DNA of 63,877 nt, the filler included, from Octopus bimaculoides (taxonomy: Eukaryota), in assembly GCF_001194135.2 (NCBI RefSeq). It is 7 parts of 7 records of this genome, joined end to end, with 100 filler letters (N's around TTAATTAATTAA, not from the genome) between each part and the next. Parts side by side here need not be neighbours in the genome. Positions count along the whole stretch, not along the records: positions 54,215 to 60,683 come from NC_068994.1; 6 more parts are not named here. One strand, given 5' to 3'. The stretch's first letter is position 1. Each line of letters opens with the position of its first letter. The notes under the pieces were generated by a model that worked only from the letters and a program-made list of their open reading frames with translations, did no database searches and had not been told where the DNA came from. Below, in pieces: positions 54,215-61,259 of the stretch. A program made the translations under genes and the position numbers.

Positions 54215-54263
<49 letters not shown>

Positions 54264-54296
54264 TTGAAGAAAAGCAGCAGAAATTCATTAGGTTAT

Positions 54297-54386
54297 AGCG
54301 CAACGTACGTTTCGTACAAACTTCATTTATTTATGTAGTGAGAACACCACATAAGATGTGCAATGAAAAGGTACTCCTCAGCTGCA
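54297..54386 (-). ncRNA. Type-I hammerhead ribozyme motif, intact core, damaged stem I junction
   Basis: Minus strand: tgcag-CTGAGGA-gtac...gtac-GAAA-cgtacgt-tgcg. Stem III acgtacgt is a perfect 8-nt palindrome; stem II has nested helices. Confidence 0.6.
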
Positions 54387-54584
54387 TAATGGAAGTTCAT
54401 TTTAGAAAGTCATGTTGTAGATGTGTGCAAATACAAGAGAAGGAGAGGAAGAAAATACCATCTTGACTGGACTGTTAATCAACAGTCTAGTGAATCAAAC
54501 ATGAATTTAATTTCTATATGTTATCTTACCCCTCCAATTAGAATATATGATGATGATGATGATGACGATGATGACGACGATGAT

Positions 54585-54775
54585 GGCTTCAAATTTTCGC
54601 ATTATGCCACCAATTTCGGGATACTCGATTTCATCGACCTCAGTACTCAACTGGTACTAATTTTTTTGGACCCTGAAAGGATGAAAAGTCAAAGTCAACC
54701 TCGTAGCAATTTGAAACCAGAACGTAAAGACGGACGAAAATGCCGCTAAGCATTTCCCCAGCGCTGTAACGAATC
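54585..54775 (-). mobile_element. SINE family C between (GAT)n and (TAA)n
   Basis: catcgacctcagtactcaactggtact...gaacgtaaagacggacgaaaatgccgctaagcatt. Confidence 0.88.
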
Positions 54776-54858
<83 letters not shown>

Positions 54859-55051
54859 GAGGTAACTCGAATGTGGAATCTAAAAACAGAAACAATTCCT
54901 ATCATAGTAGGTGCCTTAGGTATAATAAAAAAAATATTCAGACAAATACATAACAAAAACACCAGGACTTACAAATATATATAACATACAGAAAATTGCA
55001 CTACTGGGCACTGCAGTAGTGAAGTGAAAGCACATTATTAAAATAAAACTA

Positions 55052-55055
<4 letters not shown>
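54859..55055 (+). mobile_element. R4/Dong-like non-LTR retrotransposon 3' fragment inserted in (TAA)n
   Basis: EVTRMWNLKTETIPIIVGALGIIKK / YSDKYITKTPGLTNIYNIQKIALLGTA (one extra A in the A-run). This matches the restriction-like endonuclease C-terminus. (TAA)n lies on both sides. Confidence 0.8.
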
Positions 55056-55088
<33 letters not shown>

Positions 55089-55125
55089 TTAGTAATAATA
55101 ATAATAATAACGATCGTCATCATCG

Positions 55126-55165
<40 letters not shown>

Positions 55166-55393
55166 TTCTTAATTTCTCACACCTCATCCTCCATATCCTC
55201 TTTTTCATTGATCCGTTCCTTCTTTTATTCCTTTATTCTTTCGTTCTTTCCTTCGTTCGTTTTTTTCTTTCTTCCTGTTTTCCCTTCCTGTTTATCTCCG
55301 CTCTTCAAGTTACAAATGCTGCCACCATAAAAAATCTGTAAAAGGAACGAGAACCGGTCCCTAAATTAGAGGGACCGGCTTTGGTCCTATCAC

Positions 55394-55394
<1 letters not shown>

Positions 55395-55439
<45 letters not shown>

Positions 55440-55624
55440 GATGTTGTTGTTGTTGTTTTCTTTTTCTCAGCTCTTCCCTTCATTGAATCCCCGAAACAAC
55501 AATAAACCGGTTCAAAAATGGCGCTCAAAAACTTTCCAGAGGTTTCCATTGTTGCAGTGTGAAATTTTGCTTGAAGGCTGTTGATTATTGCAGTTGTTAA
55601 TGACATTGTTCTTGCCATTGCTGC

Positions 55625-55706
<82 letters not shown>

Positions 55707-55827
55707 GGTAGTGGTAGTAGTAGTAATTATTGTTGTTGTAGTTGTTGTTGTTGCTATTACTGAGGTTGTTCCTGGAATTATTGTTGTTTTCATTAACGCT
55801 GGGTTTTTATGTTGCAGTTGTTGCGCG

Positions 55828-55858
<31 letters not shown>

Positions 55859-55950
55859 CTTGTTGTTGCTGTTGCAGGAGATGTTGTTGTTGTCGTTGAT
55901 ATGGTTGATGTTGTTGTTGTGGTTGTTGTTGTTGTCGTCGTTGTTGTTTT
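55395..55950. repeat. Compound trinucleotide field (ATT, TAG, GTT)
   Basis: Directly visible; source of the poly-V/S/T/C ORFs. Confidence 0.95.
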
Positions 55951-56405
55951 TAATATAGTTCTTGTTGCTGTTGGGGAGTGGTGTTGCGAACTAAACTGAT
56001 AATTTTCTAGCTCATTGCTCCTGTGATACGTGGTAAATGCACTCTCTGACCTTTTGGGGGATGTGTTTGGAAGCCCTACCCAACGTAGAAGCACCTTCGA
56101 GCTGATGAAGGGGCCTTCGATATGGTTACTGAACTTGCTATAAATAGTAACCAAATACATATACACTCACATAAGCACACACACATTCATACACACACAC
56201 TATGGTCTTGGAAAAAAAGGGGAAGTGCACCGTGAATAATGTATTCCTAGATACACTGTTTGAATAGGAAGAGGAATGATCACAGTCACGTAGGAAGGTC
56301 TTTAATCATGGGTGTGTTCGATCAGGGCTTCCTTGGGATTAACCAAGAACAAGGACATACACCGACTGTTACGTATATACAGATACGCGCGCACACACAA
56401 ACGCA

Positions 56406-56460
<55 letters not shown>

Positions 56461-56519
56461 ATACATGCACGCCAACAAACTCTCACATCTTATAAAGTAA
56501 CAAAGAGACAGACAGATGG

Positions 56520-56567
<48 letters not shown>

Positions 56568-56663
56568 AGTTAGCGGTCATTCTAATAGCTCTTTTGTCTT
56601 AATAACGGTCAATGACACACTAATTTCATTTTGTTTAACGGTCATTTTCATAGCATTTTTTGA

Positions 56664-56737
56664 TGGCCCGATAACTGAAGAGATGCCGGCGTGGGTTTCC
56701 GCCCCGACATCCGAAACTCAGATTTTTATCATGGCTA
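56664..56737 (+). ncRNA. Degenerate type-I hammerhead ribozyme motif
   Basis: gataa-CTGAAGA-gatgccgg...ccgacatcc-GAAA-ctcagattt-ttatc. Stem I gataa/ttatc is extendable. Stem III and the cleavage triplet appear mutated. Confidence 0.5.
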
Positions 56738-56832
56738 CCGAATAATTGTCACATATTATATTTACAGATAAATTCCTCTATTTACATAATATCGAGGTCT
56801 CTTTCGTTCTTTTGTTGTCTTACTATTTCTAT

Positions 56833-56881
<49 letters not shown>

Positions 56882-57111
56882 TTAGAAGTTAGACAACCAT
56901 CTAAGGGATAATAAATATCCAATATACTACTAGAAGGATACCTATTTATTTCCAAATTCTTACTGTTGCAAGGCAATAGTACAATTGTATAAAAGCTACA
57001 AGTGGAGGTAAACAAAAGTTTATCCAGAATTTATAAGGCAGGGAAGGAAATAGAGAAGAGATTCGATCGACAAACAACAGCAAGATCTATTTATTACAAT
57101 CATAGGAATAA

Positions 57112-57363
57112 ATAAATAAATGCAAATCAACTCTTACATCTGTTTCTACTTTGATGTTTTCAGTCTGCTAAATTTGACATATCAAAAATCCATAATGGTA
57201 AGAAGTAAAAAAGTAAAACGTTAAAGTTCAAGGTTATATCCAGAAGTTGTGAGATCACATCTTACTACAATTTGAAGCTTTGGGATTCAATTTTTGATAT
57301 GTCAACTTTAGCAAACTGAACCCCCAATGTAGAAACAGCTGTAAGAGTGGAGTTGTATTTATT
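57112..57363. repeat. Diverged fold-back (about 80-bp arms)
   Basis: 57112-57193 is a diverged reverse complement of 57281-57363; both arms contain gtagaaacag(c/a)tgtaagagt. Confidence 0.8.
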
Positions 57364-57922
57364 GATTATAAAAAGACAATATCTCATCTTACAGCTGTTT
57401 CTGTTCGCGCTATTTTGGGCGTAATCAGGCTTAATTATTACAATAATAATAATTATCACTGTAAATAATTATACCAACTTAAATAGTGGAACTTCATCAG
57501 AGCGGAAAAATAAAGAAAAAGAAAAGAGAAAGCATGAGAAAAGAGAAAATAAGGATATACCAATCGATGTTACATGTTAACCCTCTGAAAACTTTTCGAC
57601 CGACTGAAAACTTTAGTTATACAGTTAAAATCCTAATTATTCTAATTATTCTAACTGCACGACTAAATTTTTCAGTCGGTCGAATGGTTTTCACAGGGTT
57701 AACATGTAACATCGATTGGTATATCCTTATTTTCTCTTTTCTCATGCTTTCTCTTTTCTTTTTCTTTATTTTTCCGCTCTGATGAAGTTCCACTATTTAA
57801 GTTGGTATAATTATTTACAGTGATAATTATTATTATTGTAATAATTAAGCCTGATTACGCCCAAAATAGCGCGAACAGAAACAGCTGTAAGATGAGATAT
57901 TGTCTTTTTATAATCAATAAAT
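57357..57922. repeat. 566-bp palindrome with identical 224-bp arms
   Basis: 57357-57580 is the exact reverse complement of 57699-57922 (compared base by base; no mismatch seen). Confidence 0.95.
57581..57698. mobile_element. 118-bp piggyBac-type MITE
   Basis: TTAA at 57577-57580 and 57699-57702; CCCT...AGGG ends; 37-bp TIRs with 4 mismatches. Confidence 0.8.
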
Positions 57923-58637
57923 TATAATTTATGTTTATCAACTATCAATTTTATCTCCATTTTCTTATTTTTCCTTATATATATATAAATACATATCTAA
58001 AAGAATTCTCTCTCCCTATCTTGTTATATGAGGGTATGTGTATGTACATATGTACGTATGTATGTATGTTTGCATATATATATATATGTATATATATATA
58101 TATGAAAATCTATGGGAATGACTTAATACAGTTTTTTGAAGTGTAAAGGTGATTTAAAAAAAGAGAATTATTTTTTATAAAAGTGTTATGAAATATTTTA
58201 TGAGGATGTTACTAACCTTTTTTTGGGAAGAAGTTTTTTCTAGTGTCTGAGCGCTTTCGTTAAACCTTTTCAAACACACGTGCTCTTAAAGAGGAAGTTG
58301 TTATTTTCGTACACACTGTGCATATATACCTTTGTATGTGTTTATGAATGTATATGCTTGTCTATCCGCCCCACTTATATTATTTTATCAGCATTGTAAC
58401 TGAAAAGCGATTATTCAACGTAGGTTTCTTCATCATAAACAGAGTATTTCAATTATATTTATAACTTATTTAGTAAGTTCATCTGACTTTTAGTTTGGTT
58501 TAGTCTCGCTAAATGTTGACACATGTGTAAATCTCTTCAACATTTGACTTTTATTTTGTGTCTTAATCATTACTTTATTTTCTCGTTTTCCCCGTTACCT
58601 TAACTGCGTTTTAATGTACTATAATATTGTTTTGTAA

Positions 58638-58691
<54 letters not shown>

Positions 58692-59361
58692 GTGTACGCA
58701 CGTATGTTGTGTGTGTGATTATAATACGAACGCCAGACCAACCCGTTTTCAATTACCACGGTGACAAAACATAATAGGCACAAAGAAAGCAAAGAAACGA
58801 GTAAGAAAAGCGATATGAAATACTAGTCATAAGCAAAAACAAATAGAAGTCCGATGAGGAATTAAGAAAATAATAAAAATCCGTGAGTTTTTATACAAAA
58901 ATAAACGAACAGGATTTAATAAATACGAAAAATGGTAGAAATAAATATGATATATGCAAAATTGAGAATTTATGTTATTTTTTTACTGTAATACTTCAAA
59001 AGCAATGAGAATTAAATGTGACAAGGATAGGTCAAATTTCAGTATAGGGGATGGATTGAAGTTAATACATGAGCAACTGATATGTGGTTATGGGGGAGGA
59101 ACATTGAGAGCATATCGGCGTGATAGGCGCGCAATCAATATGATTAATAATGATGACTACCAATACATGAGAAAGAAACTGAGAAACGAGTAAGAAAAGC
59201 GAAATATCGTATTGGACAAAGGGAAAACTGCAGCAGTAACGGGTAGCCACAGTTTATACAGTTACAATAGCCAAAAGGACCGGCTATTATAAGCAAAAAT
59301 AGATATTGAAAACAAAAACGCATTTGGCCATATTTAGACATACGACAGTTTAACATAATAG

Positions 59362-59403
<42 letters not shown>

Positions 59404-59926
59404 AAACAAGGTGTACGTACGCCGCTATATATATATATATATATATATGTATAAATAGTACAGAAAGGGACAAGGATGCAAAACATCCAGACAGTTAGGT
59501 GACACAAGAAAGGGACAAAACATCAAGATAGACGATACAAGGAAACAAGGACAGGTCATTCGGAGTTTTCTTTCCTCAGTCGAGATCCATATTATCCTTG
59601 CAATTTCGGCTGGTTATTCTCGATATTGCTCCAATCTGGCCAGCCCCAAGGAAAAACTAAGCGAAGAGCATTAGATTCCTTGGAAGAAAGCAGCGAATGT
59701 ATACAAAAATATATTAAATACATGAAATACAAAATATGTACACACATATATATATATAAGTACACATGTTTTGCAATCCAAGTATTTGATATGCTTTATA
59801 TAATGATCTGTCTAATTTGCTTGTCCTCATATTTACTTCTATACACACTCAAGTTTAAATCTTTTAAATCTCGTGAGCACTACTAAGTGTATTCCATATG
59901 GAGAATATCTGGATCTCATCTGTGAG

Positions 59927-59965
<39 letters not shown>

Positions 59966-61259
59966 CTTTAAGCTTGTCTTTCTACATTTGCTATTGAATT
60001 CAGGAGTTACGATGTTTCGTAAACAAATACGTAAATGTAAACGTTGCGATTAAAAGTAGAAAATAGGTAATGGGTGTATATACACATATCAAGAGTTATT
60101 GCTCTTTCATCAGCACCACATCCAATCCATCAACTATCCACGAAAGCATTGCTTAAATACACACTAGGTTTAGAAGTGTAACGCAACTGGAGAGACCAAT
60201 CGGCATATTAAACATATTTCTAACAACTTGTACGTACGTATTAAATGCTGGCAAGGCCACAGTATTTCGTTGCACAACCATAATATACAACTGAGTATGC
60301 TAAAGGTTTACAAGTCAATACTGTGTTACATCTTGTGTTAACAGTGCGATATTTGTAATCTTTAAGTTTATTGCTATAGATTTTCTTTAAAATTCAGAAC
60401 CTGCACGGGAAGTTACAGTGTGTCGTAAACAATTACTTTTATGTAAACATTGAATCGAAGATTGAAAATACAGGTAATGGCTGTATATTGATAACACAAG
60501 GTAAGACAAACTGTTGACTTGTAAATGTGTATTAATATACTTAGAAGTATATAATTGTAGCAAAACGAAATACTGTGTCCTTGACGGCAATTAATAATAT
60601 ACGTAAGCATTTGTATACAGATAGTACTGGAAATAGGAGCCTTTAAGTGATGTATGTATGTATATATATATATATATATATATNNNNNNNNNNNNNNNNN
60701 NNNNNNNNNNNNNNNNNNNNNNNNNNNTTAATTAATTAANNNNNNNNNNNNNNNNNNNNNNNNNNNNNNNNNNNNNNNNNNNNTATATATATATGCATAC
60801 ACACATGTGTATGCTTCTTAATCTCTACCCTTCTGTGAGTGTATGTTTTACCATTTACTATCGAGTTTTCTGTAGCATTGTATATCACCAGTGAGTACAC
60901 TTCTTCCTTGGTCTCTTTCTGATACCCAGTTTTTCTCTCAACTTATTTGTACCCTGGTAATCTTTTTACACTAACATTACACATTTTCAGTGCAAACTAG
61001 TTATGGTTCTTTCTAGTCTTCACAAATCTGAATTCTTGGCTCAAGTCTTGCTTACCATGCAGCTTTGCAGTTCTAACACAAACATCATACAATCTACTTT
61101 ACACTCTGAAGGACAAGACCTTTGTCACCAGCAGCAATAACACTGTGTAACATGAGTTTTGTCCTTTATTCCCTGTTGCTTACCCTTAGAAAGTATGAAA
61201 AATGGATAATATTTCCTTCAAAACGTAACTTTTGTTACAATATTTATCCAAGCCCCAAA

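What the first reader, a model, noticed from the sequence alone, without database searches (positions are those of the whole stretch)
57357..57922. Perfect 224-bp inverted duplication of flanking DNA around a piggyBac-type MITE
Seen: the MITE's own TIRs have 4 mismatches, but the 224 bp outside each TTAA are identical mirror images. So one flank appears copied over the other very recently. Established: piggyBac transposes through hairpin intermediates at TTAA, and long perfect palindromes are unstable. Inference: (a) hairpin-mediated inverted duplication at a MITE end, (b) a new larger fold-back element capturing host and ribozyme-remnant DNA, or (c) an assembly artefact. If transcribed it would give about 260 bp of near-perfect dsRNA.
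Basis: partly seen in the sequence, partly recalled or inferred. Interest (0 to 1): 0.75.

Follow-up and report, generated by a model that had tools for sequence, protein, structure and literature searches.

The report
MITE-seeded fold-back duplication of flank
A 118-bp piggyBac-type miniature transposon sits at the exact centre of a 566-bp palindrome whose outer 220-bp arms are flawless mirror copies; this is most simply the scar of one DNA-copying accident in which the transposon's own hairpin primed a backwards copy of its neighbouring DNA, a known kind of mutation seen here at unusual length but not checked against raw reads.

Summary
57357-57584 is the perfect reverse complement of 57695-57922: 228 nt, made of 220 nt of flank, TTAA and CCCT. 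Simulated sequence gives at most 20 nt. The 110-nt core (57585-57694) pairs at only 39 of 47 positions. The switch from perfect to imperfect falls exactly at TTAA|CCCT, the only TTAACCC in the piece. So a 118-bp piggyBac-type MITE (57581-57698) is flanked by a much younger inverted copy of one flank.

Best explanation (about 0.6): a 3' end at the MITE boundary folded back on the MITE's own inverted repeats. It copied 220 nt of the opposite flank and then rejoined the chromosome. Such fold-back (template-switch) insertions are documented experimentally up to about 150 bp.

I found no support for a new mobile 566-bp element (no target-site duplication, no TTAA at the outer edges) or for a ribozyme remnant (no Rfam hit).

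It would need two unrelated novel junctions. Genomic copy number, the ancestral allele and transcription are untested. This is a new member of a known kind, of moderate-to-low interest.

The parts
57357..57576 (.). Left outer arm X (220 bp). It is non-coding, AT-rich, and has a purine-rich stretch at about 57505-57556.
   Evidence: Exact reverse complement of 57703-57922. Unrelated to the outer flanks apart from one 16-nt motif.
57577..57580 (.). Left TTAA (piggyBac-type target-site duplication)
   Evidence: Read directly from the sequence. This is the only TTAACCC in the piece.
57581..57698 (.). 118-bp piggyBac-type MITE. Termini are CCCT...AGGG. The imperfect inverted repeats are about 57581-57631 and 57648-57698, with a central 16-nt loop containing a CTAATTATT x2 repeat.
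   Evidence: With its flanking TTAAs (57577-57702) it folds as ssDNA at -37.8 kcal/mol, z=-13.6. Its longest perfect internal run is 16 nt.
57699..57702 (.). Right TTAA
   Evidence: It is self-complementary, so it is implied by the palindrome and is not independent evidence of a duplication.
57703..57922 (.). Right outer arm X' (220 bp), the inverted copy of X. Which arm is the original cannot be told from the sequence.
   Evidence: 100% identity to the reverse complement of 57357-57576. Extending a snapped-back 3' end at 57702 in silico reproduces 57357-57922 exactly.
57387..57402 (+). 16-nt motif TCTTACAGCTGTTTCT inside the arm, mirrored at 57877-57892. It is identical to the tip of the neighbouring hairpin element's inverted repeat.
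   Evidence: Exact 16/16 match to the reverse complement of 57331-57346. The alignment score beat all 300 shuffles.
57130..57348 (.). Neighbouring 219-bp hairpin (MITE-like) element with about 60-nt inverted repeats at 87% identity. It ends 8 bp left of the palindrome and is not part of the duplication.
   Evidence: 57130-57189 against 57290-57348, 86.7% over 60 nt.
57923..57945 (.). Right outer junction and flank B (TATAATTTATG...). This is where the copied arm rejoins unique sequence.
   Evidence: Palindromy stops abruptly at 57356/57923. B aligns to the arms no better than shuffled sequence.

Best explanation
This is a one-off structural mutation, not a gene or a mobile unit. A piggyBac-type MITE had inserted at a TTAA.

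Later a DNA 3' end arose at or within about 8 nt of one MITE boundary. The cause could have been a replication stall at the MITE hairpin, a random break, or an abortive one-ended transposase cut. The single strand carrying flank-TTAA-MITE-TTAA snapped back on the MITE's own inverted repeats. The last 8 nt (AGGGTTAA) paired perfectly with TTAACCCT and served as a primer terminus.

A polymerase then copied about 220 nt of the opposite flank, making its reverse complement. The new strand then left that template and was joined to the other side of the chromosome, either by a second template switch or by end joining.

The result is flank X, the old imperfect MITE, and a brand-new perfect X'.

Shown: the anatomy, and that this mechanism reproduces it base for base. 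Inferred: that the event happened in vivo, its trigger, which arm is the copy, and how the second junction formed. The likely consequence is neutral, or a locally fragile, hairpin-forming site. If transcribed it would give a dsRNA stem of about 270 bp.
For: 1. The perfect/imperfect boundary coincides with the MITE end. Identity is perfect through TTAA+CCCT and the first mismatch is the fifth MITE base. TTAACCC occurs only here in the piece, and the chance of it lying within 5 nt of a given boundary is about 5e-4.

2. There are two age layers: 0/228 against 8/47 mismatches, p=4e-7.

3. The hypothetical resected tail 57357-57702 folds as ssDNA with the MITE hairpin formed, the 3'-terminal 8 nt paired, and X left as template. 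The MITE with its flanking TTAAs folds at -37.8 kcal/mol, z=-13.6.

4. In-silico extension of that primer gives exactly 57357-57922.

5. Outer flanks A and B are unrelated to the arms, and there is no duplication at the outer edges. So the arms were not delivered by transposition.

6. The mechanism is demonstrated experimentally. In yeast, a break next to a 10-bp imperfect inverted repeat with a 41-nt spacer yields fold-back inverted insertions of 2 to about 150 bp, made by Pol delta and captured by end joining (PMC11724301). Replication template switches create or expand perfect inverted repeats in a single event (PMC13100816; PMC8794818).

7. The longest perfect run inside the MITE repeats is 16 nt. 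A k>=21 de Bruijn assembler therefore cannot turn back here without real reads carrying the junction.
Against: No ancestral or alternative allele is available. At 220 nt the copied tract is longer than documented fold-back insertions (about 150 bp) and template-switch events (10-59 bp). Microhomology at the second junction cannot be assessed without the pre-event sequence. That the 118-bp unit is a multicopy mobile family is unverified: no other copy was found in the 6.5-kb piece, and the searchable collections showed no sign of this genome's DNA. Perfect arms could also be kept identical by arm-to-arm gene conversion, so 'very recent' is not proven.
Confidence: 0.6

Rival explanations
1. An assembly or library artefact. 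The real genome has flank-MITE-different flank, and the inverted arm was created by a chimeric molecule (fold-back during amplification or end repair, or a chimeric long read) or by a gap-filling step.
For: Perfect identity (0/228) is what an artefact gives. MITE hairpins promote in-vitro fold-back just as they do in vivo. Both ends of the 6.5-kb piece lie in (TA)n, which suggests a fragmented draft assembly. No reads could be examined.
Against: Two unrelated novel junctions are needed: right inverted repeat to X' at 57702/57703, and X' to B at 57922/57923. A fold-back chimera makes only the first and then runs on into the reverse complement of A, not into B. The MITE repeats share at most 16 perfect nt, so a k-mer graph cannot fold back without junction-bearing reads. 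The palindrome is internal to the contig, with about 3 kb of unique sequence on each side.
Confidence: 0.2
2. The order of events was reversed. A spacer-less perfect 444-bp palindrome X-TTAA-X' existed first, and the MITE then inserted into its central TTAA.
For: The result would be identical: TTAA on both sides and perfect arms. piggyBac transposase binds a severely bent target with the TTAA unpaired (PMC7351741). A TTAA at the tip of an extruded cruciform would suit that. piggyBac families are reported as recently active in Octopus vulgaris (PMC13282606), if this is an octopod.
Against: It needs an extra unexplained event to create a perfect spacer-less palindrome, a form treated as fragile and recombinogenic (PMC7999016). 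It also needs the insertion to hit one particular TTAA; there are 46 in this 6.5-kb piece alone. The fold-back model explains the central position of the MITE for free.
Confidence: 0.08
3. The whole 566-bp palindrome, or a larger unit, is itself a repeated mobile element: a long-inverted-repeat or fold-back transposon, or a composite built around the MITE like coral CMITE-IN.
For: Composite elements created around a piggyBac-type MITE exist (CMITE-IN, PMC2872659). Each arm carries the 16-nt repeat tip of a neighbouring hairpin element, so the arms contain transposon-derived DNA. Copy number in the genome could not be examined.
Against: There is no target-site duplication and no TTAA at the outer edges (GGAGTTGT|ATTTATTG ... 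CAATAAAT|TATAATTT). The arms have no tandem subrepeats. The sharp step from 0% to 17% mismatch exactly at TTAA|CCCT is not expected inside a single element's inverted repeat. No relative turned up in protein-space or pattern searches, though those collections do not appear to hold this genome.
Confidence: 0.07

Closest known systems
Local fold-back templated inverted insertions at double-strand breaks (yeast Break-Ins study, PMC11724301; snap-back synthesis in SD-MMEJ, PMC5728401)
   Same: An imperfect inverted repeat with a spacer lies next to a DNA end. The 3' tail folds back, a polymerase copies the adjacent flank in reverse complement, and the product is captured by the other end. The seed repeat stays imperfect while the new copy is perfect.
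   Different: Documented tracts are 2 to about 150 bp and mostly under 14 bp; here the tract is 220 bp. The seed here is a transposon's ~47-nt paired repeat zone rather than 10-bp microhomology. This is a natural genome with an unknown trigger, and the event itself was not observed.
Replication template-switch mutations and inverted-repeat expansion (PMC5453318, PMC8794818, PMC13100816, PMC10710096)
   Same: A single event turns or extends a short or imperfect inverted repeat into a longer perfect one. Two switches are involved, out and back. The events create hairpin-forming loci de novo.
   Different: Reported arms are 10-48 bp and the largest pattern is about 59 bp. This would be about 4 times longer and nucleated by a MITE.
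piggyBac-like MITEs (PMC5381638; coral CMITE, PMC2872659)
   Same: The inner 118-bp unit has TTAA on both sides, CCC...GGG termini, inverted repeats longer than 12-19 bp and no coding capacity.
   Different: Family membership by copy number, and a matching autonomous element, could not be tested. The outer arms are not part of any piggyBac element.
Large fold-back inverted duplications and ODIRA (PMC3907307, PMC10766183)
   Same: Short inverted repeats seed an inverted duplication with the repeat's spacer at the centre.
   Different: Those have kb-to-Mb arms, dicentric or extrachromosomal intermediates and copy-number change. Here the arms are 220 bp and the chromosome continues normally.
Hairpin-RNA (hpRNA) / endo-siRNA loci and ADAR dsRNA substrates (PMC10317233)
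   Same: A long near-perfect inverted repeat that would fold into dsRNA of about 270 bp if transcribed.
   Different: There is no evidence here of transcription, small RNAs, editing or a target gene. The arms look like non-coding, transposon-rich DNA.

Membership tests
piggyBac-type MITE (inner 118 bp) | TTAA target-site duplication on both sides | tested here: met
   TTAA at 57577-57580 and 57699-57702. Caveat: TTAA is self-complementary and lies inside the perfect palindrome, so the two copies count as one independent observation.
piggyBac-type MITE (inner 118 bp) | Inverted repeats starting CCC / ending GGG (C[C/A/T][C/A/T]), at least 12-19 bp (PMC5381638) | tested here: met
   CCCTCTGAAAAC... 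and ...GTTTTCACAGGG. 39 of 47 positions pair. The hairpin with its flanking TTAAs folds at -37.8 kcal/mol.
piggyBac-type MITE (inner 118 bp) | Small and non-coding | tested here: met
   118 bp. The only ORFs crossing it are incidental read-throughs with no homologues.
piggyBac-type MITE (inner 118 bp) | Multicopy family with the same ends at different loci | not testable with these tools
   No second copy in the 6.5-kb piece. The repeat pattern had 0 hits in the metagenome, prokaryote-genome and viral collections. Those collections showed no sign of this genome's DNA: a word from its SINE-like repeat hit only one unrelated 51%-GC contig.
piggyBac-type MITE (inner 118 bp) | Autonomous partner encoding a piggyBac transposase with matching inverted repeats | not testable with these tools
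   No eukaryotic genome collection was available.
Kolobok-type MITE (also targets TTAA) | Terminal RR / AG(G) motif next to TTAA (PMC6004289) | tested here: not met
   The termini are CCCT / AGGG when read outward-in, i.e. they start with CC, not AG or RR.
Fold-back templated inverted insertion / template-switch repeat expansion | A pre-existing inverted repeat at the centre, with the copied tract starting at its outer end | tested here: met
   The perfect tract begins within the last 8 nt of the MITE plus TTAA.
Fold-back templated inverted insertion / template-switch repeat expansion | The new tract is an exact reverse complement of the immediately adjacent opposite flank, and the seed repeat is left imperfect | tested here: met
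   0/228 against 8/47 mismatches. The simulated product is identical to the observed sequence.
Fold-back templated inverted insertion / template-switch repeat expansion | An ancestral or alternative allele lacking the inverted copy | not testable with these tools
No contig encoding any of five window ORFs is on record.
Fold-back templated inverted insertion / template-switch repeat expansion | Short (0-5 bp) microhomology at the return junction | tested here: inconclusive
   The junction ...AATAAAT|TATAATTT is sharp on the template side. The pre-event partner sequence is unknown.
Fold-back / long-inverted-repeat transposon (whole 566 bp) | Target-site duplication at the outer ends | tested here: not met
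   The left flank ends GGAGTTGT and the right flank starts TATAATTT. There is no direct repeat and no TTAA.
Fold-back / long-inverted-repeat transposon (whole 566 bp) | Arms built of tandem subrepeats (classic FB elements) | tested here: not met
   Tandem Repeats Finder reports nothing between 56879 and 58034.
Hammerhead ribozyme / retrozyme remnant in the arms | Match to a hammerhead covariance model | tested here: not met
   No hammerhead family at E<=1 over the piece or at E<=10 over 57100-57980. The only hits are sub-threshold miRNA-shaped ones caused by the hairpin.
hpRNA / endo-siRNA locus | Transcription across the repeat and phased 21-22-nt small RNAs | not testable with these tools

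The most novel reading that the evidence does not exclude
MITE hairpins in this genome (possibly a cephalopod) may recurrently seed fold-back duplications of their flanks. That would be a general route by which short transposons grow into long perfect palindromes. These could become fragile sites, new fold-back elements, or de novo long-hairpin RNA genes feeding RNAi or ADAR editing. This locus would then be a freshly made example caught before decay.
Probability: 0.07. Interest if true: 0.7.

Novelty: new member of a known kind. Interest (0 to 1): 0.33.

Why it matters
If real, this is an unusually clean natural example of a fold-back or template-switch mutation. The seed (an old, imperfect transposon hairpin) and the product (a flawless 220-bp inverted copy) can be told apart base by base. 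The tract is longer than those documented experimentally. It shows how a miniature transposon can turn ordinary flanking DNA into a long perfect palindrome in one step. Such a structure can stall replication, break, or yield long double-stranded RNA if transcribed. It is also a useful warning for assembly quality control, because perfect palindromes centred on MITEs deserve a read-level check. As a single unverified locus in apparently non-genic DNA, its wider importance is limited.

Tried and rejected

2. Independent assemblies of the locus: the look-up of encoding contigs with five window ORFs found nothing on record. The ORFs were the 98 aa across the centre, the 64 aa across the left junction, the 71 aa right flank, and the 161 aa and 109 aa ORFs.

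3. Other copies through protein space: the 98-aa ORF gave no homologue at E<=10. The ORF from the SINE-like repeat shared no words with any protein in the database.

4. Other MITE copies by DNA pattern: TGAAAACNNTTCGACCGACTGAAAA gave 0 hits in metagenome, prokaryote-genome and viral contigs. As a control, a 21-nt word from the SINE-like repeat hit only one chance 51%-GC contig. These collections therefore show no sign of this genome's DNA, and the negatives say nothing.

5. Ribozyme remnant: rejected; no hammerhead in Rfam. The sub-threshold miRNA hits are generic hairpin matches.

6. A long, older imperfect palindrome extending beyond the arms: rejected. Flanks A and B align to the arms no better than shuffles, apart from the 16-nt repeat tip.

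7. The piggyBac transposase hairpin as the cause: rejected on mechanism (PMC7351741).

8. Kolobok assignment: rejected because the termini are CC, not AG/RR.

9. Organism: the repeat at 54575-54770 looks like the common octopod SINE from memory. A literature search for its sequence words found nothing relevant, so the organism stays unverified.

10. A literature search found no paper describing a MITE-centred inverted duplication of flanks. That library is partial.

Full report
**1. What is there**

The piece 54215-60683 is AT-rich (about 32% G+C). It is very rich in microsatellites (21 Tandem Repeats Finder rows) and has no convincing coding sequence.

The longest inverted repeat runs 57357-57631 against 57648-57922. 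Base-by-base comparison about the axis i+j=115279 gives three zones:
- 57357-57584 is an exact reverse complement of 57695-57922 (228 nt).
- 57585-57631 pairs with 57648-57694 at 39 of 47 positions.
- 16 nt at the centre are unpaired.

Palindromy stops abruptly at 57356/57923.

In 200 first-order Markov simulations of the piece, the longest exact inverted word averaged 14 nt and never exceeded 20. '224 bp' is 220 nt plus TTAA, and the perfect match continues four bases into the inner element. '4 mismatches' applies to the first ~37 nt of the inner repeats; the whole pairable zone has 8.

**2. Anatomy**

The step from perfect to imperfect lies at TTAA|CCCT on the left (57577-57584) and AGGG|TTAA on the right (57695-57702). 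TTAACCC occurs nowhere else in the piece. The chance of finding it within 5 nt of a given boundary is about 5e-4.

The inner 118 bp (57581-57698) therefore has the defining marks of a piggyBac-type MITE:
- a TTAA target duplication;
- CCC...GGG termini;
- inverted repeats longer than the family's 12-19 bp;
- no coding capacity (PMC5381638).

The other superfamily that targets TTAA, Kolobok, has AG/RR termini (PMC6004289), so it does not fit. With its flanking TTAAs (57577-57702) the unit folds as single-stranded DNA at -37.8 kcal/mol, z=-13.6.

Two membership features could not be tested: other genomic copies, and an autonomous partner element.

The arms differ sharply from the inner repeats in mismatch rate: 0/228 against 8/47, Fisher p=4e-7. 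So the arms are either a much younger layer or are actively kept identical.

The arms are not related to the sequence outside them. Alignment of either arm to 300 bp of left flank A or right flank B scores no better than shuffled sequence. The one exception is a 16-nt motif (57387-57402, mirrored at 57877-57892). It is identical to the repeat tip of a separate 219-bp hairpin element at 57130-57348, which ends 8 bp from the palindrome.

There is no direct repeat and no TTAA at the outer edges (GGAGTTGT|ATTTATTG ... CAATAAAT|TATAATTT). The arms have no tandem subrepeats.

No hammerhead or other Rfam family reaches threshold. Even at E<=10 on the 881-nt neighbourhood, the only hits are sub-threshold miRNA-shaped ones produced by any hairpin. 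The 'ribozyme remnant' in the finding is not supported.

**3. Mechanism**

The simplest history that yields 'old imperfect hairpin in the middle, flawless inverted copy of one flank outside it' is fold-back priming.

A single strand ending at or just beyond one MITE boundary snaps back on the MITE's own inverted repeats. Folding the hypothetical tail 57357-57702 as ssDNA gives exactly that structure. The MITE hairpin forms, the last eight bases AGGGTTAA pair with TTAACCCT, and the 220-nt flank is left as template.

Extending that 3' end in silico along the flank reproduces 57357-57922 base for base. A second switch or an end-joining step then reconnects the new strand to flank B.

This mechanism is documented:
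- In yeast, a break beside a 10-bp imperfect inverted repeat with a 41-nt spacer yields fold-back inverted insertions of 2 to about 150 bp. They are made by Pol delta and captured by NHEJ or alt-EJ (PMC11724301).
- Replication template switches create or expand perfect inverted repeats in one step. Reported arms are 10-48 bp and the largest pattern is about 59 bp (PMC13100816; PMC8794818; PMC5453318).

What is unusual here is the tract length (220 nt) and that the seed is a transposon.

The following remain inferred and not shown: the trigger (a fork stall at the hairpin, a random break or an abortive transposase cut), which arm is the copy, and whether the event was germline.

That hairpin caps the transposon end, with TTAA as its loop (PMC7351741). 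Replicating through it would duplicate the MITE itself, whereas only one MITE is present.

**4. Rival explanations**

Both ends of the piece lie in (TA)n, which suggests a fragmented draft assembly.

Against an artefact:
- Two unrelated new junctions are required. A fold-back chimera gives the first and then continues into the reverse complement of A, not into B.
- The MITE repeats share at most 16 perfect bases. A k-mer graph with k>=21 cannot turn back there without reads that really carry the junction.

I put this at about 0.2.

*(b) MITE inserted into the central TTAA of a pre-existing 444-bp perfect palindrome.* The product would be identical. piggyBac transposase does bind a bent target with the TTAA unpaired. 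But this needs an unexplained, fragile spacer-less palindrome (PMC7999016) and a hit on one particular TTAA. I put it at about 0.08.

*(c) The 566-bp unit is itself a mobile composite.* Composites built around piggyBac-type MITEs exist (CMITE-IN). Here, though, there is no target duplication and no TTAA at the edges. There is also a sharp identity step that a single element's inverted repeat would not show. I put it at about 0.07.

Separately, arm-to-arm gene conversion could keep the arms identical. 'Perfect' therefore does not strictly prove 'recent'.

**5. What could not be done**

- No independent assembly of the locus was found through five window ORFs.
- Protein-space searches with the central ORF and with the ORF from the SINE-like repeat found nothing.
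- The MITE repeat pattern had no hit in the metagenome, prokaryote-genome or viral collections.
- A control word from the piece's SINE-like repeat found only one chance match, in a 51%-GC contig. Those collections show no sign of this genome's DNA, and the negatives say nothing.
- The organism is unverified. From memory the repeat at 54575-54770 resembles the common octopod SINE. piggyBac families are reported as recently active in Octopus vulgaris (PMC13282606).
- Transcription, small RNAs and RNA editing are untested.
- The predicted RNA hairpin is -435 kcal/mol over a stem of about 270 bp. That is a property of the sequence, not evidence of function.

**6. Verdict**

Most likely this is a MITE-seeded fold-back (template-switch) inverted duplication of 220 bp of flank: a new, unusually long and clean member of a known class of mutation (confidence about 0.6). 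An artefact remains a live alternative until junction-spanning reads are checked. Interest is moderate to low for a single locus. It would rise if a genome-wide census showed that MITEs do this repeatedly, or if the hairpin is expressed.

Noticed in passing
window 57130-57348: A second 219-bp hairpin (MITE-like) element lies 8 bp left of the palindrome. Its ~60-nt inverted repeats are 87% identical (ACTCTTACAKCTGTTTCTAC...), and no clear target-site duplication was seen. Its 16-nt repeat tip recurs exactly inside each palindrome arm (57387-57402, 57877-57892). Two ends of one element family therefore face each other across 40 bp.
   Followed up: partly
window 54575-54858: A SINE-like unit (54575-54770) is followed by a perfect (TAA)27 tail. 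From memory it resembles the abundant octopod SINE, which would make this a cephalopod genome. I could not verify this with the tools.
   Followed up: partly
window 54860-55050: This stretch translates to ...TETIPIIVGALGIIKK..., which reads like the decayed C-terminal tail of an invertebrate LINE ORF2. It is followed by an (AAT)n run. This rests on memory only.
   Followed up: no
window 54215-54263 and 60655-60683: Both ends of the piece lie inside (TA)n microsatellites. The piece holds 21 tandem-repeat rows: TA, TAA, TAG, TGT, CA, TATC and ATC. Ends in microsatellites suggest contig breaks of a short-read or fragmented assembly, which bears on the artefact question.
   Followed up: partly
window 55040-55464: Inverted microsatellites (AAT)n at 55055-55110 and (TTA)n at 55394-55439 bracket about 283 bp. 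That interval contains an (ATC)n run and a small perfect hairpin, CCGGTCCCT...AGGGACCGG, at about 55354-55378.
   Followed up: no
window 60005-60488 and 58793-59227: Diverged direct repeats lie about 406 bp apart (60005-60081 against 60411-60488, 81-86% identity). Another pair lies 389 bp apart (58793-58838 against 59182-59227, 76%). These are old local duplications or tandem transposon fragments (families D12, D13, D17).
   Followed up: no
window 56095-56125: The stretch CGAGCTGATGAAGGGGCCTTCGATATGG contains a CUGAUGA box followed by a short stem. It gave no Rfam hammerhead hit at E<=1.
   Followed up: partly
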